Assembly (NCBI RefSeq): GCF_006345805.1
Contig: NW_021834021.1
Coordinates: 1 to 51,486, forward strand
DNA length: 51,486 bases
Source of the DNA: Octopus sinensis
Lineage: Eukaryota
Direction: 5' to 3'
Shown: positions 2,329 through 37,365 of the stretch, piece after piece
How the letters are laid out: the number at the start of each line of letters is the position of its first letter
Numbering within the stretch: position 1 is the stretch's first letter
Position numbers and translations under genes: made by a program
The notes under the pieces: generated by a model
The model's database searches: none
What the model saw: only the letters and a program-made list of their open reading frames with translations
What the model was told of the DNA's origin: nothing

Positions 2329-2370
2329 CCTTTTCTCTCTCCTTTTCCTTTTTTGCACTTTTATCGGAAC

Positions 2371-5300
2371 ATGCTCAGAATAGGTAGTATAAATGTACGT
2401 GGCTTGGGGTCGCCTTGGAAACAAGGCTACCTGTTAAATGACATCAAGTCACTAAATCTGAATATCATAGCCATCAGTGAGACCAGACTCCACAGCTTGC
2501 GGGCACTCCAGCACATTTTCGGTACACATTTCAACATTTATTTTTCTCCGTGTCTACCGAGAATGGGCGGAGGTGGCACCGCGGTGCTTATCCGGAAGAG
2601 TCTGGATCTCAAAGTAAGAGCAAATTTCCTAGACCCGGAGGGTAGGCTGGTCGTTTTGGATGTCGATGGCAGCAATGAGTGTGCTTTTCGACTGATAGCA
2701 GTTTATGCTCCGTCCTTAACAGGCCGACCAGATTTCTTTCGACGTCTAGAGTCTTTCATGGGAACGTCTCGTCCTTTACTTTTAGTGGGGGATTGGAATG
2801 CCACCCTGGACACGCATCTAGACTACGTGGGCAGAGATAGCAATAGAAGGGGATGCAAATGCCTCAAAGACCTGCTCAGACGTTTCCAACTGTCTGACAG
2901 GTACCGACTGGACCACCCGAATGTGCCAATGTGGACATGGAGTAACCGCATCGGGTCGTCCAGATCATACTTAGATAGAGTATTCTGTAGGACAATAGAT
3001 AAAAATAGTGTAGGTTGTCCACAATTTCATATAGTCAGTTACACAGATCACAAGTTTGTGACTTGTACACTTGACTTAGATAAGACACATAGGCAGGGTC
3101 CTGGTTACTGGAAACTGAACGCGTCTTTTACAGCACGACAGGTTTACAGGGACCGGATCAGCACATTAGTTAAGAGAGCTTTGACGGGTACCATCATCAA
3201 CAACAGATGGTGGTATGCCCTAAAAAAAGCGATTAAAGCAGAATCAGTCAGATACAGTAGAGCCCTAGCATTAGACCGAAATAGAATAGAGGGAGAATTA
3301 GTTAAGGTTTTAGAAGAGGCACTTAGAACTGGCATCGCGTCCAACGTACTGGCGGCGAGATTGGCCCTCGACCAACACCTCAACGCCAAACACGAGGGAT
3401 GCGTTGTCAGAGCTAGGATGCGTGCTCTGAGGAACGAAGGAGTTGGAGCCGCCCAAGAGGCCCGAGTGGTGGAGACGCAACGAGGCAACAGAGCCACCAT
3501 CAAGTCTCTTATAGATGAACAGGGGCGCGAATTGCTCGAGCCTAAAAGGATGTGTGGGGTTTTTCAACAACACTTCACCCAACTGTTTGGGACAAGTGGT
3601 GAGTCAGAAAGCAGAGTGGACTTTAGTGCCTACCTGCATGCCTTGCCACGACTCTCAGCAAGGGAGGTGGAGTCTTGTGAAAAGCCTATCACAGCTGCGG
3701 ACGTACAAGATGCGATGGTAGGCTGCGCGAGAGACAAGTCACCAGGCTTGAAGGTCTGCCCTACGAATTTTATTTTCATATGCCAGACTTGTTTGGAGGC
3801 GTCTTGGCAGCTGTCTACTGCAACTGGCAGCAGAACGGGAGTATTCCTGCTTTTGTAAAGCGAGGAGCAGTGGCACTGATCAAGAAAGACCCAAACAAGG
3901 GGGACGTCATAGATAATTTCAGGCCCATCACTCTGCTAAACGCAGATTTGAAAATTTTGGCCAAGGTGTTAGCCGAGAGGTTGGCGCTTGTCATCAAGAA
4001 ACTAATCGACAAGGCGCAAACATGCGCCGTGCCGGGTAGAAGTATTCATGACAACCTCCATCTGATGCGCTACATCATAGACAGGGTAGTTAAAAATCCT
4101 GGCATGGGTGGGGCGCTGATCAATTTGGATCAATCAAAAGCCTTCGATAGGGTAGACCATCACTACTTGGAGGCTGTCCTCAAAGCGGCTGGTTTCGGTC
4201 CAGTTTTCCGCGGTTGGATCGCTGCCTTATACAGCGGCATCCGCTCAGTAGTTCGCGTAAATGGTCATCTATCCAGACCTTTTAACATCATGCGTTCGGT
4301 TCGTCAGGGATGCCCCCTCTCATCGCTGCTGTATGTACTGACTCTTGAGCCACTACTGCGGAAACTGGCGACGCTGAGGGGCATCCCACGAGAGCTGGGA
4401 TGCGGGAGGAGCGTGTCTGCATACGCGGATGACGTCACCGTCATAGTGTCGAGCTACGAGCACATCGAGCTGGTCGGCGAGACACTGAAAGAATACGAAG
4501 CGGTAACGGGAGCAAAAATTAACCGGGAAAAGTCAGTGGGCTTGCGGCTCGGCACCTGGAGAAGCAAGCCCATGCCGTCCAACAGCGTCTCCATCGTGGG
4601 ACGCTGGACGGACGGACCGGTTAAATTGCTCGGGGTCTGGTTCGGTCCGGACCTCCAAATGGAGAAGAACTGGGGCGAGATAACGACTAGGGTGGCTACT
4701 CTCACCCAGAAATGGACTGAGAGAAAGCTATCCCTAAAAGGTCGGGCGGAGGTGGCGAACGCGTACATCGCATCCGTCATCGAGTATCGTCTGACCGTCG
4801 TGCCTTGTCCCGACCCTACCATCACCAAACTGGAACGCATACTCTTCCGCTTCTTGTGGAAGGGAAACGTTCCGATGGTTAGGCGATCCATTTGCTGCCA
4901 ACACCCGCTAAATGGAGGGCTGGGCATGCCGTGGTTGATGATGCGCAGACATACGCTGAGACTGCGACATCTCCGGCGCTTCATAGACAACGGTGAACAG
5001 GGTGGTCGCCTTTTGTGCGGCGCGCTTTCCCGCAGCTCGTCTCCTTGGACGAACTACAGTCATGGATCAAGCAGAGACCGAGGCTAGGCGAATGGCACCG
5101 CGAGTGTCGCGTTGCTCTCAAGCAACTCTGCCGTCCGGGATCGAACTTGTGCGACTCCATCACAACAAAGGCATTCTATAGAGGATTAGTGGAGGGGAGG
5201 TGCGACGACGAACTCGGGCAGAGTCTGGGCGTCGACGAGGAACACCTGACCCGCCTGTTCAGGACACTTTCGGGCCGGGACCTATGAACAATACCAAAGA

Positions 5301-6689: not shown

Positions 6690-6728
<39 letters not shown>

Positions 6729-8578
6729 TATCATCATTTAACATCCACTCACCATACTGGCATGTGTCGGCTGGTTTGACAGGAGATTATGAGTCGGTGA
6801 GCTGCCCCACGTTCCTGTCTGATTTGGCATGGTTTCTACAGCTTGATGTCCTTCCTAATGCCAACCACCCCAGGTGTGTAACTGGTGCTTTCACATGCCA
6901 CTGGCACGGGTGCCACTTGCATGACACCGACAATGTCCACGACTACGATTCACGGATGGTTGCCATTTAAATGGCACCACCAATGACGATAATTCCCAGG
7001 TGCCAATTTACATGGCACCATCAGTGGCCACAATTACGATACCCAGGTGTCATTGACATGGCACCGGAAGCGAACAGCCACATCTATGATGCACGGGTGC
7101 CACTTATAGGACACTGGCACGACCACATCCTTATCATCACTTTGCCTGACATGTCCTCTCTCGCAGAGAATATCACCAGGGCTTTCGGCCACTTGTCATC
7201 TCTTCCATAATGCCCAACGGTTGGAGATCATTCTTCATCAACTCATCGAAAGTCTTCTTGGGTCTCCGTCTTCCAAAGGATCCTTCCACAGTTAGAGATC
7301 GGCACTTTTTGACACAGCTGTCCATGTCCATACACATCGCAAGACCATACCAACGCAGACGTCTTTTTGCACACCCCACTTGATGTCTCCAATGCCCAGC
7401 TTTTCTCTCAAGGCCCCCATACTCTGTCGTACATGCACACTGACATTGTACACCCAGCGAGACATACTGGCTTCATTTCTTTCAAGCCTATGGAAGTCCT
7501 CAGAGAGGTCACATCCCATGTTTCACTGATATGTAACATAGTTGTTTACACACAGGCATCATAACATCTGCCTTTCAATCACAGGGAGACGTTCTTTGTT
7601 ACCATTAGAGTTAAGACCATTCTGAACTTTGCACATCTTATTCTTATTCTTGCAGCTATACTCAAGGAACAACCAACCACACTCCTGACTTGGCCACCTA
7701 GATAGCGGAAACTATCAACTCCCAGTAGCTTACTTACCTGGCAATTGATGGGCTCTATTTTCTCTACATTTGTGCTGTTTATTGTACCTGTGCACCTTCC
7801 ACACAGAAAAACTATTATCCCCGTTAACCTTCCTCTGATATTGCTGCAACACTTATGTGTCCATACCTTACATTGGGCACATCTTATGAACTTCCTACCT
7901 ACGCTTTTTCTACAGATCGAACAGTGCCATCTTCCTAAGGGGATTTGTGAATTGCCCGCTTTCCTACTTACTAAAACTGGTTTTTGTTAGACTAAGTTTA
8001 GGGTCCTTTGATTCTAGCCCTTACTGATATACCTAAAATTTACCTAGTTCTGAAAGTTATTCGGCTATGATAACAAGGTCATCAGCATTGGGGATCTCCT
8101 AGAAGCAGTTCATCTTAAATTCCTCTGTTATTGCCTGGAGGACTCTGATAAACAGGAAGGCGCTGAGGACTAATCCATGATGAACCCCTACTTGTACCCT
8201 AATTCATTGCTACACACGATGCCAAACCTCACCTTACTGACAGCATCCCTGTACATGGCTTGTAACGCTCTCACCAACCATTCGTCCATCCCTAGTTTTT
8301 GCAGTGACCGCCAAATAAGGGATCAAGGGATCCTGTCAAAGCCTTTCTCCGTGTTTAACAAAGGCCCAGTACAAGAGTTTATCTTTGGCTTTGTACTTCT
8401 CCTGCAGCTGCCTTATCAGGAATATAGCATCAGAGGTGCTTCGCTGTGGCACAAAACCAAATTGCATCTCTTCTGGTCTAACACCCGTCCTAATTATTTT
8501 GTCTGTGACCCTCTCTGTAATTTTCATTGCTTCATCTAATAGTTTGATACCTCTGTAATTATTTCCGTGCAAGGCATC
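6690..8578 (-). mobile_element. Decayed, 5'-truncated RTE-clade LINE with (GAT)n tail
   Basis: Minus-strand RT fragments NNYRGIKLL...MQFGFVPQRSTSDAIFLIRQLQEKY (8336-8572) and RRLRWYG...GRRRPKKT (7173-7379); GTGCC/GGCAC-repeat 3' UTR and GAT tail at ~6690-6737. Confidence 0.85.
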
Positions 8579-22222: not shown

Positions 22223-23166
22223 CTGGTCTTCATAAATGACTTGCCCGACGACCTCACGCAACACACCATTCTATTTGCCGACGATATCAAACTGGTCGCT
22301 CCTCGCGGTGATATAGAGGATCTTCGTCGATGCCTCCACCAAATTTGGAAGTGGTCTAACGAATGGGAACTGTGTCTGAACGTGTCAAAGTGCTGTCATC
22401 TGCCTGTTGGCTCTCCTCCTGCAACTCAACTTGATTTCGAGCCGGGTCATCTGCTGCTGGAAAGGACCGATCAGGTAAAGGACCTGGGTATCTTGGTGGA
22501 TTCCTCCTTTTCGCCTTCGGCCCAGTGCGTCCATGCTGCCAACAAAGCACGCGGAATTCTGTTCTTGATTCGACGGTCATTCGGAATGCTCACAGCAGCC
22601 ATATTCCTACCACTCTATGTCACGCTGGTGAGACCCATATTGGAGTACGGGATTCAAGCCTCTTCTCCCTATCTCCTCAAAGACATACAGCATCTCGAAA
22701 GAGTCCAGAAGCTGGCTACCCGCATGGTTCATGGTCTCAAAAATTTGTCCTATGAAGAAAGGCTGAGGACGCTCGACCTTTATTCTCTTGGAAAACGCCG
22801 CTGCCGTGGTGATCTCATTCTCGCCCACAACATCATAAGCGGAAAGTGTAACCTCTCGAAAGAGCTGTTCTTCACTCCTGCTCCAGAGTGTCGGCTGCGG
22901 GGTCATTCCGAAAAGCTCTACCTGCGACGATTTCATCTCAATCGAAGGAGAGGAGCTTTCTCCGTCCGGGTTGCGGATCCGTGGAACAAGCTGCCAGACG
23001 AGATGGTGAAGATGCCGACGACCGCTTTGTTCAAAGCCTCCCTTGACCTCTAGTGTCCTGAACTCTTTATATGAACACCACCCTGTACTTAACTCCATGT
23101 CCCCCTACATGACCTTGCTATTTGCTTTTGAACCAAATTAACTAACTAACTAACTAACTAACTAAT
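22223..23166 (+). mobile_element. Young 5'-truncated CR1-clade LINE with (CTAA)n tail
   Basis: Open frame FINDLPDD..LFADDIK..KDLGILVD..LVRPILEY..LERVQKLATR..RGHSEKL..FSVRVADPWNKLP; tail 23138-23166. Confidence 0.92.
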
Positions 23167-25592: not shown

Positions 25593-27249
25593 ATTTCTGT
25601 GTAACTGTTGTTGTTTAGCCTCAGATTAACCTTGACCAAACAGAGACTTATGATCAAACGCATTCCAGCCAAGACCATCATGCCTATTTCCAAAGAGAAC
25701 CCACAACCACATTGTCCAATATGCCCTTCTGTACAGTGGTATCGTGTGAATTTAGCTACCAATTCTAGCAGGTATATCAACCACATAGTGATCCCTTCAC
25801 TGGTTTGGCTCCTTTGTTAAAAATTCACATTTAAAATAAAGACAAACTTTGAAATGTTCATTTATTATTGTTGCTGTTGTTGTATATCTAATCCCCTCCC
25901 TAAACAACCCCATTGTTATATAGACAGCTTTAATATCGTCTGCTATATTGATAGTTATCTACCTTCATTTTTAGCTGAGAGTAGAATGCCTGGTATATAT
26001 ATATATTGATGCCTTTTCCCTTTATATATCCTATAGAGATAGTATTTCTATATAATACATGATGTATCTAAGGATATATCTCACTTTGTCCTGTTGTGGT
26101 TTAAGACAGGCTTCTCCAAAGTGGTGGTGGTTGAATAAAAATTCAGTGGGTTTTGAGTGCAATATACAATATTCTAATTTTATATTCTTACTTTATGACC
26201 TTCGTTATTTACTAATGACTGCAATTTCCGTCAGTAAAAATAAAACTTCACTATTATACATATGAAAATAAATCAAAAAAATTATAATTAAACAATAGCT
26301 GTGCTGAAAAATCCTGACACAACATTTGTTGTTTTAATTGCATGTGATTGTGGAAAAGCCACAGTGTCTCCCTCTTCTTAAGTAACTTCAGATAAAGGAA
26401 GAGTACAATTCTTCCCTACAATATTTACCTTCATATTACTCCACTGTTATTTTAATTTGAAATTAGATTTCAAGTTCTTACAGCAGAGACCAAGATTAAA
26501 TAAGTAAAACACATGAGACCTTTATGTACATTATAAGATGTGACAGGAAGCTCTACCGAGCAGACTTTTGTGGAATTGGAAAGGAAGATTCATAAGTATT
26601 TTCCACTTTTTATTGGATTCTTTTGTGATAGAAGTGAACAAACCTGATTGTTTTCAAATTAAATAATCAAGATATTTAAATTAGATAAAAAGGAACTTTA
26701 TTCAGAAATTGATAATTACTATTAAAGCAAAACGAAATTTTACCGGTGAGTGTGTTAAATAATAAGGCACTAAAAGAGAATGACTCTCCCCAGACACAAC
26801 AAAATTATTTTGTATCAAACTTTGTACAAAATTCTTCTAAATAAATTGATAACATAAGTTTCTGATTTTTTGCTTGGATAACTGGGGGAGAAATTCTATT
26901 CACACATTATATGCCATGTAAATACACAACAAAATAATAAGGCTGTTCAAAGCTATAGGTTACTGTTTATATAGACCAGCTGGAGCAAATTTAGTTTAAC
27001 ATTTAATGCGTAGCAATAAACTCATTTATAAAAGTGTTAGTTTTCTTTAAATTGAGAAAATGTAAGACTTTTAGTGACTTTATAAAACTAAAAAGAGTAA
27101 CTTCAAACTTTGATGACCCCAGACAAATTCCTTTACTGACTGAGATCTTCATCTTGTTCTGGTCAATGACTGTCAAAGTAATTTTCATATTTTAAAAGCA
27201 TCAAAAGGAAAATTTGTTGCCTAGAGAAGAGAGGTTGAATTTGTCATCC

Positions 27250-27542
27250 GACTCGTAGCCGATGCCAGTACCGCCTCGTCTGGCTTCCGTGCCGGTGGCA
27301 CATAAAATGCACCAATCCGACTGTGGCCGTTGCCAGCCTCGCCTGGCACCTGTGCAGGTGGCACGTAAAAAGCACCCACTACACTCACGGAGTGGTTGGC
27401 GTTAGGAAGGGCATCCAGCTGTAGAAACACTGCCAGATAAGACTGGAGCCTGGGGCAGCCTTCTGGCTTCCCAGATCCCCGGTCGAACTGTCCAACCCAT
27501 GCTAGCATGGAGAACGGACGTTAAACGACGATGATGATGATA
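27250..27542 (+). mobile_element. RTE-family 3' UTR copy with GAT tail; another copy at ~36715-37073 (+)
   Basis: gtgccggtggcac repeats ... catgctagcatggagaacggacgttaaacgacgatgatga. Confidence 0.8.
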
Positions 27543-31726: not shown

Positions 31727-32586
31727 ACATCCGAAAGGATGAAAGGCAAAGTCGACCTCGGCGGAATTGTTGAACTCAGAACGTAACGGCAGACGAAATA
31801 CCTATTTCTTTACTACCCATAAGGGGATAAACACCGACGGGACAAACAAGGACAGACAAACGGATTAAGTCATCTATATCGACCCCAGTGCGTAACTGGT
31901 ACTTATTTAATGGACCCCGAAAGGATGAAAGGCAAAGTCGACCTCGGCGGAATTTGAACTCAGAACGTAACGGCAGATGAAATACCTATTTCTTTACTAC
32001 CCACAAGGGGATAAACACAGAGAGGACAAACAAGGACAGACAAACGGATTAAGTCGGTAATATCGACCCTAGTGCGTAACTGGTACTTATTTAATGGACC
32101 CCGAAAGGATGAAAGGCAAAGTCGACCTCGGCGGAATTTGAACTCAGAACGTAACGGCAGATGAAATACCTATTTCTTTACTACCCACAAGGGGATAAAC
32201 ACAGAGAGGACAAACAAGGACAGACAAACGGATTAAGTCGTCTGTATCGACCCCAGTGCGTAACTGGTACTTATTTAATGGACCCCGAAAGGATGAAAGG
32301 CAAAGTCGACCTCGGCGGAATTTGAACTCAGAACGTAACGGCAGACGAAATACCTATTTCTTTACTACCCACAAGGGGCTAAACACAGACGGGACAAACA
32401 AGGACAGACAAACGGATTAAGTCGGTAATATCGACCCTAGTGCGTAACTGGTACTTATTTAATGGACCCCGAAAGGATGAAAGGCTAAGTCGACCTCGGC
32501 GGAATTTGAACCCAGAACGTAAGGGCAGACGAAATACTGCTAAGCATTTCGCCCGGCGTGCAAACGTTTCTGCCAGCTCGCGCCTT
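31727..32586 (-). mobile_element. tRNA-derived SINE (family 3) head followed by four 184-bp internal tandem units
   Basis: gaaaggatgaaaggc anchors at 31733, 31919, 32103, 32287 and 32471; tRNA-like head aaggcg..gagctggcagaaacgtt at the right end; related copies at ~39890-39990 and ~45505-45940. Confidence 0.88.

Positions 32587-33574: not shown

Positions 33575-33655
<81 letters not shown>
32995..33655. repeat. Complex (ACAT/ACGT)n microsatellite then (AT)n
   Basis: Direct reading. Confidence 0.95.
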
Positions 33656-33657
<2 letters not shown>

Positions 33658-34418
33658 TCATCGTTTAACGTCATTTTTCCATGCTAGCATGGGTTGGACG
33701 GTTCGACCGTCGTCTGGGAAGCCAGGAGGCTGCACCAGGCTCCAATCTGATCAGGTATTGTCTCTACAACTGGATGCCCTTCCTAACGCCAACCACTCTG
33801 AGTTTAGAGGGCGCTTCTTACGTGCCACCAGCACAGGTACCCCAGGAGGCTGGCAACGGTCACGATCGGTTGGTGCTTTTTATGTGCCCCCAGCACGGAA
33901 GCCAGTCAAGACGGCGGTGGCATCAGCCTCGTTGAGATGGTGTTTTGTATGTGCCACTGGCACGGGTATCACAACTACAATTTCCATTTGATTTTTATTT
34001 CGATGTTGATGTACTTGTCTCAGTAGGTCTCCTCAAGCACAGCAGGTCACCCTACGATCGAAGGTAAGCACAGTAGGCCGTCCTGAGATCCAAGGTATTT
34101 TCGATGGGTTGGGGCTGTTATGTGAAGCTGGTGCAGGAAACAGCCTCACGTTATTTGTCGGGTCTTCGCTGTCACAGCATATCTCCAGAGGTCTCGGTCT
34201 TTCGTCATTGCCTCTGTGAGGCCCAACGCTCGAAGATCAAGCTTGATCACCTTATTCCACGTCTTCCTGGGTCTACCTCTACCCCGGATACCTTCAACTG
34301 TTTGGGAGTGGCACTTCTTCGCACATCTCTCCTCATCCCTCCGGAGTACATGACTATACCAGCGCAAACTTCTTTCTTGCATGCCACATCCGATGCTTGT
34401 TATGTCCAGCATTTCTCT
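33655..34418 (-). mobile_element. 5'-truncated RTE LINE (ORF C-terminus + 3' UTR + GAT tail); another 3' UTR copy at ~43021-43560 (-)
   Basis: QERSLRWYSHVLRRDEERCAKK...GRGRPRKTW...LWRYAV (34146-34421). Confidence 0.88.
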
Positions 34419-34662
34419 CATATATATATATTATTTTATAATTAATCAATATAGGCGGCAAAAAAATTTTGTAGAATTTTTTTGCCACCAGCGGCCTAGT
34501 GGGAAAAAAATTAAATAGTCATAGACCATTTTTAAGTTCAACATCAACAATCAAGGAACGGCCATAATAGGCCATTCACCCACTAGAAATAACAGCCAAA
34601 GCTTCAACCGCAAATAAAAATCAATTCCGTAAACAGGAGAAAATTTAAAAAACATTTACCCT

Positions 34663-34775
34663 GCAATTTCTTAGACGATGCACCGTTTCATCTGCTGTTT
34701 AATGGTAAACTAACCTGATTAAATTAAATCAAGCCAATCTTCCATAGGCCCTCAGATTCCTCAGTAAGAAATAGC
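34663..34775 (-). ncRNA. Type I hammerhead ribozyme (antisense-oriented unit)
   Basis: Reverse complement of the motif at 35476-35588. Confidence 0.85.
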
Positions 34776-35475
34776 CCAGTCGGAACAGATATTTTCACGA
34801 GGCATTTCCGACCCTGCCAAGGCAATATCTGACCTAAAATTTTCAAATCATCGCACTCGCGCCAAATTTATCGGCAGCAAATAAATATAAGCCGTCGATT
34901 CCATTACGGAATTAACCAGAAAATTCATAATTAATCAATATAGGGCGGCAAAAAAATTTTGTAGAATTTTTTTGCCACCAGCGGCCTAGTGGGAAAAAAA
35001 TTAAATAGTCATAGACCATTTTTAAGTTCAACATCAACAATCAAGGAACGGCCATAATAGGCCATTCACCCACTAGAAATAACAGCCAAAGCTTCAACCG
35101 CAAATAAAAATCAATTCCGTAAACAGGAGAAAATTTAAAAAACATTTACCCTGCAATTTCTTAGACTGTTATTTCTAGTGGGTGAATGGCCTATTATGGC
35201 CGTTCCTTGATTGTTGATGTTGAACTTAAAAATGGTCTATGACTATTTAATTTTTTTCCCACTAGGCCGCTGGTGGCAAAAAAATTCTACAAAATTTTTT
35301 TGCCGCCCTATATTGATTAATTATGAATTTTCTGGTTAATTCCGTAATGGAATCGACGGCTTATATTTATTTGCTGCCGATAAATTTGGCGCGAGTGCGA
35401 TGATTTGAAAATTTTAGGTCAGATATTGCCTTGGCAGGGTCGGAAATGCCTCGTGAAAATATCTGTTCCGACTGG

Positions 35476-35588
35476 GCTATTTCTTACTGAGGAATCTGAG
35501 GGCCTATGGAAGATTGGCTTGATTTAATTTAATCAGTTTAGTTTACCATTAAACAGCAGATGAAACGGTGCATCGTCTAAGAAATTGC
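35476..35588 (+). ncRNA. Type I hammerhead ribozyme, predicted cleavage after C35577 (GUC)
   Basis: Stem I GC-U-AUUUCUUA / UAAGAAAU-U-GC; core CUGAGGA (35487-35493); stem II AUCUG/CAGAU closing a 58-nt insert; GAAA (35562-35565); stem III ACGG(UGCA)UCGU; C17. Confidence 0.87.
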
Positions 35589-35964
35589 AGGGTAAATGTT
35601 TTTTAAATTTTCTCCTGTTACGGAATTGATTTTTATTTGCGGTTGAAGCTTTGGCTGTTATTTCTAGTGGGTGAATGGCCTATTATGGCCGTTCCTTGAT
35701 TGTTGATGTTGAACTTAAAAATGGTCTATGACTATTTAATTTTTTTCCCACTAGGCCGCTGGTGACAAAAAAATTCTACAAAATTTTTTTGCCGCCCTAT
35801 ATTGATTAATTATGAATTTTCTGGTTAATTCCGTAATGGAATCGACGGCTTATATTTATTTGCTGCCGATAAATTTGGCGCGAGTGCGATGATTTGAAAA
35901 TTTTAGGTCAGATAATGCCTTGGCAGGGTCGGAAATGCCTCGTGAAAATATCTGTTCCGACTGG

Positions 35965-36077
35965 GCTATTTCTTACTGAGGAATCTGAGGGCCTATGGAA
36001 GATTGGCTTGATTTAATTTAATCAGGTTAGTTTACCATTAAACAGCAGATGAAACGGTGCATCGTCTAAGAAATTGC
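35965..36077 (+). ncRNA. Type I hammerhead ribozyme, predicted cleavage after C36066
   Basis: Same core and stems as 35476-35588. Confidence 0.87.
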
Positions 36078-36454
36078 AGGGTAAATGTTTTTTAAATTTT
36101 CTCCTGTTTACGGAATTGATTTTTATTTGCGGTTGAAGCTTTGGCTGTTATTTCTAGTGGGTGAATGGCCTATTATGGCCGTTCCTTGATTGTTGATGTT
36201 GAACTTAAAAATGGTCTATGACTATTTAATTTTTTTCCCACTAGGCCGCTGGTGGCAAAAAAATTCTACAAAATTTTTTTGCCGCCCTATATTGATTAAT
36301 TATGAATTTTCTGGTTAATTCCGTAATGGAATCGACGGCTTATATTTATTTGCTGCCGATAAATTTGGCGCGAGTGCGATGATTTGAAAATTTTAGGTCA
36401 GATATTGCCTTGACAGGGTCGGAAATGCCTCGTGAAAATATCTGTTCCGACTGG

Positions 36455-36567
36455 GCTATTTCTTACTGAGGAATCTGAGGGCCTATGGAAGATTGGCTTG
36501 ATTTAATTTAATCAGGTTAGTTTACCATTAAACAGCAGATGAAACGGTGCATCGTCTAAGAAATTGC
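36455..36567 (+). ncRNA. Type I hammerhead ribozyme, predicted cleavage after C36556
   Basis: Same core and stems as 35476-35588. Confidence 0.87.
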
Positions 36568-37365
36568 AGGGTAAATGTTTTTTAAATTTTCTCCTGTTTA
36601 CGGAATTGATTTTTATTTGCGGTTGAAGCTTTGGCTGTTATTTCTAGTGGGTGAATGGCCTATTATGGCCGTTCCTTGATTGTTGATATATTATTTTATA
36701 TATATTATATATATTCAATTCGAATCGAAATCCAATTGAACCAGCCAGAACCCCTGGTCTGGTGGTACGTAAAAAGCACTATCCGACTCGTGGCCGATGC
36801 CAGCGCCGCCTCGACTGGCTTCCGTGCCGGTGGCACGTAAAATGCACCAATCCGACCGTGGCCGTTGCCAGCCTCGCCTGGCACCTGTGCGGGTGGCACG
36901 TAAAAAGCACCCACTACACTCTCGGAGTGGTTGGCGTTAGGAAGGGCATCCAGCTGTAGAAACATTGCCAGATAAGACTGGAGCCTGGTGCAGCCTTCTG
37001 GCTTCCCAGATCCCCGGTCGAACCGTCCAACCCATGCTAGCATGGAGAATGGACATTAAACAATGATGATGATTTTATTTTTATTTTATCTAGTTTCATC
37101 TCACGAGCTGTGACCATGCTGGGGCACCACCATTCTGCTGGGGCACCGCCATTATATATAGATAGATAGATAGATAGATAGATTATCTCTTTGTCTAAAT
37201 GGAATAAGTATAAAAATGAATATTGTCAATTTAATTAAAAAGGTCCATATGGCTGAAGAGTGCTTTACATTTTAAATCTGATGTAATACTTACATTGTTT
37301 AATAAATGAAGTAGCATGAAACGATTGTACTACACTACCTTTGGATATCCTTGTTGCTTGTATTG

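What the first reader, a model, noticed from the sequence alone, without database searches (positions are those of the whole stretch)
34440..36687. Retrozyme-like array: every complete ~490-bp monomer carries a full type I hammerhead ribozyme
Seen: what looks like an AT-rich satellite contains, once per unit, the full hammerhead core (C3-U-G-A-G-G-A9, G12-A-A, A15.1-U16.1, GUC cleavage triplet). It has an 8+2-bp open stem I, a 5-bp stem II carrying a 58-nt insert with its own hairpin (cttgatt/aatcagg), and a short 4-bp stem III with a palindromic UGCA loop. Established: tandem repeats with one type I hammerhead per monomer define animal non-LTR retrozymes, whose transcripts self-cleave to monomers and form abundant circular RNAs; very short stem III motifs often work as dimers. 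Inference: this is a young retrozyme family in a probable cephalopod, with a monomer longer than the ~150-400 nt I recall for described animal retrozymes and an unusual expanded loop 2. I do not know of such a family being described in octopus, but cannot search.
Basis: partly seen in the sequence, partly recalled or inferred. Interest (0 to 1): 0.95.

Follow-up and report, generated by a model that had tools for sequence, protein, structure and literature searches.

The report
Hammerhead-ribozyme retrozyme insertion in a cephalopod
A 2.2-kb block of 490-bp repeats in a cephalopod genome is one young insertion of a non-coding mobile element (a "retrozyme") in which every full unit encodes a hammerhead self-cutting RNA motif; this kind of element is known in other animals, so it is a new member, not a new kind.

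Summary
All four complete 490-bp units carry a full type I hammerhead: 12 of 12 invariant core bases, an 8-bp open helix I, a 5-bp helix II extended by a 58-nt hairpin arm, a 4-bp helix III with a UGCA loop, and a GUC cleavage triplet. Only 1 of 20,000 shuffled monomers gave even a lenient match. Rfam Hammerhead_1 aligns full length but scores 19.3 bits against a cut-off of 34, because of the 58-nt insert.

- The left 727 bp is inverted, head-to-head with the 3.1-unit direct array.
- The whole 2,245-bp block is flanked by a 15-bp target-site duplication in a TA-rich site.
- Both outer ends fall on the monomer's only two TTGATTNNTNAT sites.

This is the tandem/inverted insertion signature of Penelope-like elements, the proposed mobilisers of animal retrozymes.

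The monomer is non-coding, 37% GC and strongly self-paired (z = -5). Helix III is a 12-nt quasi-palindrome, which predicts a double hammerhead.

The window is cephalopod, probably octopod. The 490-bp length is not unusual: ~500 bp in the cricket pDo500 satellite, and 51-972 bp in a 2026 survey.

Cleavage, circular RNA, other copies and covariation could not be tested. Verdict: new member of a known kind, moderate interest.

The parts
34426..34440 (.). Left copy of the 15-bp target-site duplication ATATATTATTTTATA
   Evidence: It is identical to 36686-36700 and abuts the repeat boundary. Under a conservative local TA-rich Markov model, P(>=15 nt) is about 0.003.
34441..35165 (-). Inverted block of about 1.49 monomers. 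In sense coordinates it runs from monomer position 488 through one full unit to about position 237.
   Evidence: BLAST of the monomer. Inverted-repeat arms are 99-100% complementary to the direct block (I1-I3).
35160..35166 (.). Head-to-head junction (cttagaC|TGTT). The inverted block ends 0-3 nt from the predicted cleavage site (sense GTC^TAAG). There is 5/7 microhomology with the direct block (ctttggC).
   Evidence: The palindrome is offset, with arms 68 nt apart (I3), so this is not a simple fold-back artefact.
35166..36685 (+). Direct tandem block of 3.1 monomers of 489-490 bp: monomer positions 79-490, 1-490 (a 489-bp copy), 1-490 and 1-131.
   Evidence: TRF period 490, 99% matches.
36686..36700 (.). 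Right copy of the 15-bp target-site duplication
34666..34772 (-). Hammerhead copy on the minus strand. Helix I 34772-34765 / 34673-34666; core C3-A9 34764-34758; helix II 34757-34753 / 34694-34690 with a 58-nt arm between; G12-A14 34689-34687; helix III 34686-34675; C17 34674.
   Evidence: Descriptor scan.
35479..35585 (+). Hammerhead copy 1. Helix I 35479-35486 / 35578-35585; core 35487-35493; helix II 35494-35498 / 35557-35561; arm 35499-35556; GAA 35562-35564; helix III 35565-35576; C17 35577. It carries a G>T change in the arm that breaks one C-G pair.
35968..36074 (+). Hammerhead copy 2 (C3 at 35976, G12 at 36051, C17 at 36066)
36458..36564 (+). Hammerhead copy 3 (C3 at 36466, G12 at 36541, C17 at 36556)
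   Evidence: Rfam Hammerhead_1 aligns full length at 36460-36562. The hammerhead fold lies 1.9 kcal/mol above the MFE of the 119-nt segment.
36676..36687 (+). Right outer end of the insertion, TTGATTGTTGAT (monomer 120-131). Presumed start point of cDNA primed from the bottom strand.
   Evidence: One of the only two TTGATTNNTNAT sites in the monomer.
34438..34449 (-). Left outer end of the insertion, sense TTGATTAATTAT (monomer 226-237). Presumed start point of cDNA primed from the top strand.
   Evidence: The second of the two TTGATTNNTNAT sites. Only 2 of 489 other positions are at least 9/12 identical to the right end.
36251..36286 (+). 15-bp A/U-rich hairpin GGUGGCAAAAAAAUUC..AAUUUUUUUGCCGCC, present once per monomer (also at 35272-35307, 35761-35796, and on the minus strand at 34454-34489 and 34944-34979). 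It is part of the predicted compact fold of the monomer RNA.

Best explanation
The block 34441-36685 is one recent retrotransposition of a non-coding, non-autonomous retrozyme of the animal (non-LTR, Penelope-associated) type, in a cephalopod genome.

Shown from sequence:
- Each 490-nt unit carries a complete type I hammerhead.
- The block is flanked by a 15-bp target-site duplication in a TA-rich site.
- It consists of a 727-bp inverted block joined head-to-head to a 1,520-bp direct tandem block.

Inferred mechanism:
1. Multimeric plus-strand transcripts self-cleave after GUC (C17). This most likely happens through double hammerheads, in which two units share a 12-bp helix III.
2. A host RNA ligase circularises the 490-nt monomers into a compact RNA.
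3. The reverse transcriptase/endonuclease of an autonomous Penelope-like element cuts both strands of a TA-rich target. It primes cDNA synthesis from both 3' ends at internal UUGAUUNNUNAU sites of the RNA and copies more than one unit length, either by rolling round a circle or by running along a multimer.
4. The two cDNAs are joined by microhomology. The result is the inverted-plus-direct array.
For: Hammerhead:
- 12 of 12 invariant core positions, type I topology and the GUC triplet in 4 of 4 full units, and nowhere else in 103 kb of scanned strand.
- 1 lenient and 0 equal-quality hits in 20,000 shuffled monomers.
- Rfam Hammerhead_1 aligns end to end on the same residues.
- The 119-nt segment folds with z = -3.5, and its MFE already contains helices I and II. 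The full hammerhead fold costs only 1.9 kcal/mol more.
- Helix III is -0.2 kcal/mol as a hairpin and -17.5 kcal/mol as a self-duplex. Cofolding two segments predicts a double hammerhead 13.5 kcal/mol better than two monomers.

Retrozyme features listed in PMC7229834:
- Tandem units.
- GC of 36.9% and a circular MFE of -143 kcal/mol, z = -5.0.
- No ORF above 42 aa.
- A TSD longer than 4 bp.

Single insertion event:
- The TSD has P of about 0.003 under a conservative model.
- There are only 6 singleton differences among the copies.

Penelope-like signature:
- Partial tandems with an adjacent inverted 5'-truncated copy, and a (TA)n insertion bias in the Naiad clade, are described for PLEs (PMC8557442).
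- A PLE protein cleaves and extends both DNA strands and initiates reverse transcription internally (PMC11167929).
- Both outer ends coincide with the only two TTGATTNNTNAT sites of the monomer.
- Retrozymes are reported as derivatives of PLE pLTRs.
- PLEs and 235 Rfam hammerhead_1 loci are reported in cephalopod genomes.
Against: - There is no experimental or transcript evidence for cleavage or circles.
- No second locus or diverged copy could be found, so there is no covariation and no proof of a family.
- The 10.1-11.1 pair is A-U rather than the highly conserved G-C, and helix II carries a 58-nt arm. Canonical loop 1-loop 2 contacts are therefore unlikely and activity could be low.
- The Rfam score is below gathering.
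- In the predicted circular MFE the 5' strand of helix I is sequestered by the core.
- No PLE (GIY-YIG + RT) ORF is present in the window.
- In vitro, PLE integration did not need hammerhead cleavage.
- The junction-at-cleavage-site coincidence (about 7/490 per end, two inner ends examined) and the end-motif coincidence (about 0.004-0.02) are post hoc.
Confidence: 0.7

Rival explanations
1. A relic. The array derives from a retrozyme or from solo pLTRs of a Penelope-like element, but the hammerhead no longer cleaves, because of A10.1-U11.1, the oversized helix II and the weak helix III. The repeat is simply a young tandem/inverted retro-insertion with no circular-RNA life cycle.
For: A-U replaces the highly conserved G10.1-C11.1 pair (conservation noted in PMC4209133). 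Rfam scores below gathering. PLE-type hammerheads show low activity in vitro, and PLE integration in vitro does not need cleavage. The singleton substitutions in the arm and in the large hairpin break pairs, with no compensation.
Against: All 12 invariant core bases and all three helices are intact in four of four copies. Changes at 10.1-11.1 occur in the cave-cricket satellite hammerhead family, whose transcripts self-cleave. The quasi-palindromic helix III is exactly the design of hammerheads that act as dimers. The insertion is too young for decay to be informative.
Confidence: 0.15
2. The element is the same, but it was mobilised by a LINE (twin priming of an AP-endonuclease LINE such as the one at 2353-5087), or the structure arose by a DNA-level duplication or inversion, not by a Penelope-like element.
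For: Twin priming by LINE-1-type elements also gives an inverted 5' block, a direct 3' block and a 7-20-bp TSD (established knowledge, not tested here). A LINE with endonuclease and RT ORFs lies in the same window. No PLE ORF is in the window.
Against: There is no poly(A) or LINE-like 3' tail at the end of the direct block. Both ends are internal sites of the unit that share a motif. The tandem plus inverted architecture is a described hallmark of PLEs, and TA-microsatellite targeting is described for the Naiad clade of PLEs. DNA-level inversion would not produce a TSD flanking the composite.
Confidence: 0.12
3. An ordinary AT-rich satellite with a chance hammerhead look-alike, and/or an inverted part that is an assembly artefact.
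For: There is only one locus. Rfam reports nothing at normal scale. Palindromic joins can be long-read artefacts.
Against: Shuffles give less than 1e-4 per monomer, and the covariance model aligns full length. The inverted and direct blocks are offset by 68 nt rather than forming a perfect fold-back (I3). A TSD brackets the composite. The inverted copies carry a private 1-nt deletion.
Confidence: 0.03

Closest known systems
Metazoan non-LTR retrozymes (Cervera and de la Pena 2020, PMC7229834; mussel, coral and axolotl families)
   Same: Short tandem non-coding repeats of low GC, with one type I hammerhead per unit. TSDs are longer than 4 bp. The predicted circular RNA is highly self-paired. 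A weak palindromic helix III implies dimeric cleavage.
   Different: The unit is 490 bp, against about 170-400 nt in that paper, though this is within the 51-972 bp of the 2026 survey. Helix II carries a 58-nt hairpin arm and an A10.1-U11.1 pair. The host is a cephalopod, for which the papers I could search describe no retrozyme. No RNA evidence is available here.
Penelope-like elements and their pLTR hammerheads (PMC4209133, PMC8557442, PMC11167929)
   Same: The insertion architecture matches: partial tandem plus an adjacent inverted 5'-truncated copy, and internal initiation of reverse transcription. A TA-rich target recalls the (TA)n bias described for the Naiad clade of PLEs. The type I hammerhead has a palindromic helix III and a longer than usual helix II.
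   Different: There is no RT/GIY-YIG ORF between the repeats or anywhere in the window. Helix III is 4 bp rather than absent or 1-2 bp. There is no bulged base between positions 9 and 10.1.
pDo500 satellite of Dolichopoda cave crickets and satellite 2 of newts
   Same: Animal tandem repeats of about 500 bp and about 330 bp whose transcripts are cut to monomers by a hammerhead. Double-hammerhead models exist for both. Variation at 10.1-11.1 is seen in pDo500.
   Different: Those are large satellite arrays making up per cent fractions of the genome. Here there is a single 4.6-unit insertion with a TSD and an inverted block.
Rfam Hammerhead_1 (RF00163)
   Same: Full-length alignment of the model (1-45/45) with the same core, helices and cleavage site.
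   Different: 19.3 bits against a gathering score of 34, owing to the 58-nt insertion in loop 2, a 6-nt versus 2-nt loop 3 region in the model alignment, and A-U at 10.1-11.1. Rfam-based genome annotation would not report it.
LINE-1 twin priming (5' inversion)
   Same: An inverted 5' block joined by microhomology to a direct 3' block, flanked by a TSD of about 15 bp.
   Different: No poly(A). The template is a repeat multimer or a circle. This comparison rests on my own knowledge, not on a tool result.

Membership tests
Hammerhead ribozyme, type I | Invariant core C3 U4 G5 A6 N7 G8 A9 / G12 A13 A14 / A15.1-U16.1 / H17 | tested here: met
   CUGAGGA ... GAA A...U C in all four full units. The same residues are aligned by RF00163.
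Hammerhead ribozyme, type I | Three helices around the core, with helix I open (5' and 3' ends in helix I) | tested here: met
   Helix I is 8 bp (plus 2 bp after a U.U mismatch). Helix II is 5 bp plus an extended arm. Helix III is 4 bp, including one G-U, with loop UGCA.
Hammerhead ribozyme, type I | G10.1-C11.1 closing pair of helix II (highly conserved, not invariant) | tested here: not met
   A10.1-U11.1 in all copies. Changes at this pair are reported in the pDo500 hammerheads.
Hammerhead ribozyme, type I | Rfam RF00163 gathering score | tested here: not met
   19.3 bits against 34. No hit at window or 2.5-kb scale. The shortfall is explained by the 58-nt loop-2 insertion.
Hammerhead ribozyme, type I | Helices supported by covariation among relatives | tested here: inconclusive
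   The copies differ at only 6 singleton sites, and no diverged copy was found anywhere.
Hammerhead ribozyme, type I | Site-specific self-cleavage after H17 | not testable with these tools
   Needs in vitro transcription of monomer and dimer constructs.
Metazoan non-LTR retrozyme | Tandem repeats in which every unit carries a type I hammerhead | tested here: met
   4 of 4 full units. This meets the 'active retrozyme' definition of the 2026 preprint.
Metazoan non-LTR retrozyme | Non-coding and low GC (<45-50%) | tested here: met
   The longest stop-to-stop frame is 42 aa. GC is 36.9%.
Metazoan non-LTR retrozyme | No LTR, primer-binding site or polypurine tract | not tested
   The array consists of plain head-to-tail units with no distinct internal region. 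No specific search for a primer-binding site or polypurine tract was run.
Metazoan non-LTR retrozyme | Target-site duplication longer than 4 bp | tested here: met
   15-bp ATATATTATTTTATA on both sides, P about 0.003.
Metazoan non-LTR retrozyme | Monomer RNA predicted to be compact and highly self-paired | tested here: met
   Circular plus strand -143.1 kcal/mol against -111.0 +/- 6.4 for shuffles, z = -5.0, 61% paired. The minus strand gives z = -3.9.
Metazoan non-LTR retrozyme | Dispersed multi-copy family in the genome | tested here: inconclusive
   No other copy in the 51-kb window. No cephalopod genome could be searched by DNA. Metagenome, viral and protein-word searches were empty or gave chance hits.
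Metazoan non-LTR retrozyme | Expression as linear and circular monomer RNA | not testable with these tools
   Needs RNA-seq, northern blot or RNase R.
Autonomous Penelope-like element | ORF with RT and GIY-YIG endonuclease between pseudo-LTRs | tested here: not met
   No ORF in the unit. No GIY-YIG among the 76 ORFs of at least 90 aa in the window.
Autonomous Penelope-like element | Partial tandem plus adjacent inverted 5'-truncated copy | tested here: met
   A 727-bp inverted block lies head-to-head with the 3.1-unit direct block inside one TSD. The architecture is as described in PMC8557442.

The most novel reading that the evidence does not exclude
This locus is a clean footprint of how animal retrozymes integrate. 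A Penelope-type enzyme primes cDNA from both strands of a TA-rich target at a specific internal RNA motif (UUGAUUNNUNAU), with one cDNA ending at the hammerhead cleavage site. The element also represents a cephalopod subclass of hammerheads with a long helix II arm and A10.1-U11.1. Rfam-based annotation cannot see this subclass, so it could be abundant and unannotated.
Probability: 0.25. Interest if true: 0.55.

Novelty: new member of a known kind. Interest (0 to 1): 0.4.

Why it matters
Animal retrozymes are thought to spread through small circular RNAs, but which enzyme copies them back into DNA is still argued. A 2020 review states that their sequences give no clue to the autonomous partner.

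This insertion is intact and very young, and it has three informative features:
- a TSD;
- a tandem/inverted architecture;
- two outer ends on the same short motif.

These are the kind of footprint that ties retrozymes to Penelope-like machinery, and it can be tested genome-wide in cephalopods.

The locus also shows that hammerheads with a long helix II arm fall below Rfam's threshold. Counts such as the 235 hammerhead_1 loci reported for the giant squid may therefore underestimate what is present.

If read through, the head-to-head structure would give about 690 bp of near-perfect double-stranded RNA. That could feed small-RNA or A-to-I editing pathways, which is speculative.

Tried and rejected
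- **Rfam at gathering threshold on the whole window, and at E <= 10 on 2.5 kb:** no hammerhead. Only the 141-nt search with lax filters shows it. The other weak Rfam hits (mir-5728, rli51 and others) are hairpin look-alikes far below threshold.
- **Search for other copies:**
  - BLAST of the monomer against the window found only the array.
  - Exact 20-23-mers of the ribozyme in viral and metagenome collections gave 0 hits.
  - The gapped core pattern in metagenomes gave 11 hits, all unrelated sequences without helices I or III.
  - Exact look-ups of four short ORFs of the unit gave none.
  - A word/HMMER search with all six-frame pieces of the unit joined gave none.
  - One 22-kb ENA contig (ERZ21867824; organism not identified) carrying a related LINE had no hammerhead and no similarity to the monomer.
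- **Exact look-up of the LINE RT ORF** to name the species: not on record.
- **Coding function of the unit:** rejected. The longest frame is 42 aa, and the database holds no relatives of any frame.
- **tRNA-derived SINE idea** for the unit or its neighbours: ARAGORN finds nothing.
- **Empty-site paralogue in the window:** none spans the junction.
- **An alternative register** giving G-C at 10.1-11.1 through a bulged base after A9: rejected, because it would leave an extra U before G12.
- **Fold-back assembly artefact:** rejected, because the arms are offset by 68 nt and a TSD brackets the composite.
Full report
**1. What is in the sequence**

Window 34441-36685 is built from one 490-bp unit.
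- TRF calls 35166-36687 as a tandem array of period 490 with 3.1 copies and 99% matches.
- BLAST of one unit against the window shows that 34435-35166 is the same unit in the opposite orientation, about 1.49 copies. The window holds no other copy or fragment.
- The inverted-repeat finder gives arms of 624-688 nt that are 99-100% complementary.

The 'array' is therefore a 727-bp inverted block joined head-to-head to a 1.52-kb direct block. The copies differ at only six singleton positions, four substitutions and two 1-nt indels.

**2. The hammerhead**

I scanned both strands of the window with a descriptor: CUGANGA, helix II, GAAA, helix III closed by A15.1-U16.1, H17, helix I. It finds four motifs, all in the array and one per complete unit. 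C17 lies at 35577, 36066 and 36556 on the plus strand and at 34674 on the minus strand.

Each motif has:
- helix I of 8 bp (AUUUCUUA/UAAGAAAU), plus 2 more pairs after a U.U mismatch;
- the core CUGAGGA;
- helix II AUCUG/CAGAU enclosing 58 nt;
- GAA;
- helix III ACGG-UGCA-UCGU;
- cleavage after GUC.

The 58 nt form a long imperfect hairpin with a 14-bp stem capped by UAAUUU.

Chance does not explain the motif:
- 20,000 dinucleotide shuffles of the unit, both strands, gave one hit at lenient thresholds and none at the observed helix lengths.
- 60 shuffles of the whole window gave none.

Rfam reports nothing at its gathering score or at E <= 10 on 2.5 kb. When only 141 nt are searched, Hammerhead_1 (RF00163) is the top family and aligns over its full length (1-45/45) to the same residues. 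The score is 19.3 bits against a gathering score of 34, E = 0.017. The model has to absorb a 58-nt insertion in loop 2. That explains the earlier silence, and it means Rfam-based annotation would miss this variant.

One feature deviates from the consensus. The pair closing helix II is A10.1-U11.1 instead of the highly conserved G-C (conservation stated in PMC4209133). Changes at this pair are reported in the cave-cricket satellite hammerheads (PMC2837043).

**3. Folding**

- The 119-nt ribozyme segment has an MFE of -35.0 kcal/mol (z = -3.5). That MFE already contains helix I, helix II and the arm. Enforcing helix III costs 1.9 kcal/mol.
- Helix III alone is marginal as a hairpin (-0.2 kcal/mol). 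Its 12 nt (ACGGUGCAUCGU) are quasi-palindromic and form a self-duplex of -17.5 kcal/mol.
- Cofolding two segments predicts a classical double hammerhead at -83.5 kcal/mol, against -70.0 for two separate monomers. This is the design described for newt, axolotl and Penelope-type hammerheads that cleave as dimers.
- The 490-nt unit folded as a circle gives -143.1 kcal/mol, against -111.0 +/- 6.4 for shuffles (z = -5.0, 61% paired). The minus polarity gives z = -3.9.
- In that circular fold the 5' strand of helix I pairs with the core. The circle is therefore predicted to be in a non-cleaving conformation. This is a prediction only.

**4. It is one insertion event**

The composite is bracketed by an exact 15-bp duplication, ATATATTATTTTATA, at 34426-34440 and 36686-36700, inside a TA-rich stretch. 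A deliberately conservative Markov model of the local TA-rich sequence gives P of about 0.003 for 15 nt or more.

In unit coordinates (position 1 is the first base after the cleavage site):
- The direct block runs from position 79 through two full units to position 131.
- The inverted block runs from position 488 through one full unit to position 237.

There is no poly(A). Both outer ends are internal sites, and they look alike: TTGATTGTTGAT (120-131) and TTGATTAATTAT (226-237). These are the only two matches to TTGATTNNTNAT in the unit. Only 2 of 489 other positions resemble the first end at 9 of 12 or better. Each end overlaps the duplication by an AT or ATA microhomology.

The inner junction reads cttagaC|TGTT.
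- The inverted block stops 0-3 nt from the predicted cleavage site (sense GTC^TAAG).
- It shares 5 of 7 bases with the direct block's ctttggC.

The junction coincidence (about 7/490 per end) and the end-motif coincidence (0.004-0.02) were both noticed after the fact. I treat them as suggestive.

The palindrome is offset, with arms 68 nt apart (I3). The inverted copies also carry a private 1-nt deletion. Together with the TSD, this argues against a fold-back assembly artefact.

**5. What it most likely is and how it works**

The unit is non-coding. The longest stop-to-stop frame is 42 aa, and the large protein collection holds no relatives of any frame. GC is 36.9%.

The array therefore has these sequence features of metazoan non-LTR retrozymes as defined in PMC7229834:
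- tandem units, each with a type I hammerhead;
- low GC;
- no protein-coding ORF;
- a TSD longer than 4 bp;
- a compact predicted circular RNA.

I did not search specifically for a primer-binding site or polypurine tract.

The insertion architecture matches what is described for Penelope-like elements.
- Partial tandems with an adjacent inverted 5'-truncated copy are typical, and a (TA)n insertion bias is described for the Naiad clade of PLEs (PMC8557442).
- In vitro, a PLE protein cleaves and extends both DNA strands and initiates reverse transcription at an internal RNA site (PMC11167929).

PLEs are the proposed mobilisers of animal retrozymes. A 2026 preprint derives retrozymes from PLE pseudo-LTRs.

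My best explanation (confidence 0.7) has four steps, and all four are inferred:
1. Multimeric plus-strand RNA is cut by double hammerheads.
2. The monomers are ligated into circles by a host ligase.
3. A PLE enzyme primes cDNA from both nicked strands of a TA-rich target at UUGAUU-type sites and copies more than one unit length.
4. The two cDNAs are joined by microhomology.

What the sequence itself shows is the motif, the TSD, the architecture and the youth of the array.

**6. Host and context**

- The window's LINE has an AP-endonuclease ORF at 2353-3858 and an RT ORF at 3780-5087.
- Its RT is closest to a protein of Argonauta hians (69% identity). Two JGI metagenome contigs follow at 76-80% over part of the query, and cuttlefish proteins at about 50%.
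- The window is therefore cephalopod and probably octopod.
- No GIY-YIG or PLE ORF is present among the 76 ORFs of at least 90 aa.
- According to the literature, cephalopods carry Penelope elements, and 235 Rfam hammerhead_1 loci were annotated in the giant squid (PMC6962438; PMC8557442).
- Full-text searches for hammerhead or retrozyme together with octopus or cephalopod found no paper describing such an array. The 2020 retrozyme paper does not mention cephalopods.

**7. Comparison and novelty**

Three points need correcting.
- The claim that 490 bp exceeds the described range does not hold. The pDo500 hammerhead satellite is about 500 bp, and retrozyme consensus lengths of 51-972 bp are reported.
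- A 'family' is not shown.
- The inverted block, the TSD and the PLE-type signature were overlooked.

The element fails two soft membership criteria for the canonical hammerhead: the G10.1-C11.1 pair and the Rfam gathering score. It meets the invariant core and the topology. I file it as a new member of a known kind.

It has two points of modest interest: a hammerhead with a 68-nt helix II that escapes Rfam, and an unusually legible insertion footprint.

**8. What could not be done**

- No cephalopod genome or transcriptome could be searched by nucleotide sequence. Copy number, covariation, an empty site and expression therefore remain open.
- All indirect routes were empty.
- Self-cleavage and circularity need bench work.

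Noticed in passing
window 36761-37080 (+), 27246-27538 (+), 33654-33957 (-), 43010-43382 (-), 6724-6915 (-): A ~310-bp interspersed repeat with internal 63-bp tandem units (GGTGGCACGTAAAAAGCACC...) occurs five times in the window at 74-95% identity. One copy lies about 60 bp to the right of the retrozyme insertion. It looks like a SINE-type element, although ARAGORN finds no tRNA.
   Followed up: partly
window 2353-5087: A LINE with an AP-type endonuclease ORF (2353-3858) and an RT ORF (3780-5087) in overlapping, different frames. The closest relative is a protein of the octopod Argonauta hians at 69% identity. This is the basis for calling the window cephalopod.
   Followed up: partly
window 31731-32537: A 184-bp tandem repeat, 4.4 copies at 95% identity, unrelated to the retrozyme unit. 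Its nature is unknown.
   Followed up: no
window 34454-36286: A transcript reading through the whole insertion would fold back into about 690 bp of near-perfect double-stranded RNA (arms 34454-35141 and 35599-36286, 99% complementary). That is a possible substrate for small-RNA or A-to-I editing pathways. This is speculation, with no RNA data.
   Followed up: no
window 22241-23053 and 46329-47105: Further fragments of reverse-transcriptase elements (weak RVT_1; zf-RVT). One ORF of at least 90 aa somewhere in the window has ankyrin repeats, and I did not locate it. The window is otherwise microsatellite-rich with no obvious host gene.
   Followed up: no
L001 (JGI metagenome 3300037598, contig Ga0314843_0099506): An environmental metagenome contig encodes a LINE RT that is 80% identical to the window's over 64% of the query. 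This suggests that some JGI 'metagenome' records contain cephalopod-like host DNA or RNA. The retrozyme itself was not found in that collection.
   Followed up: partly
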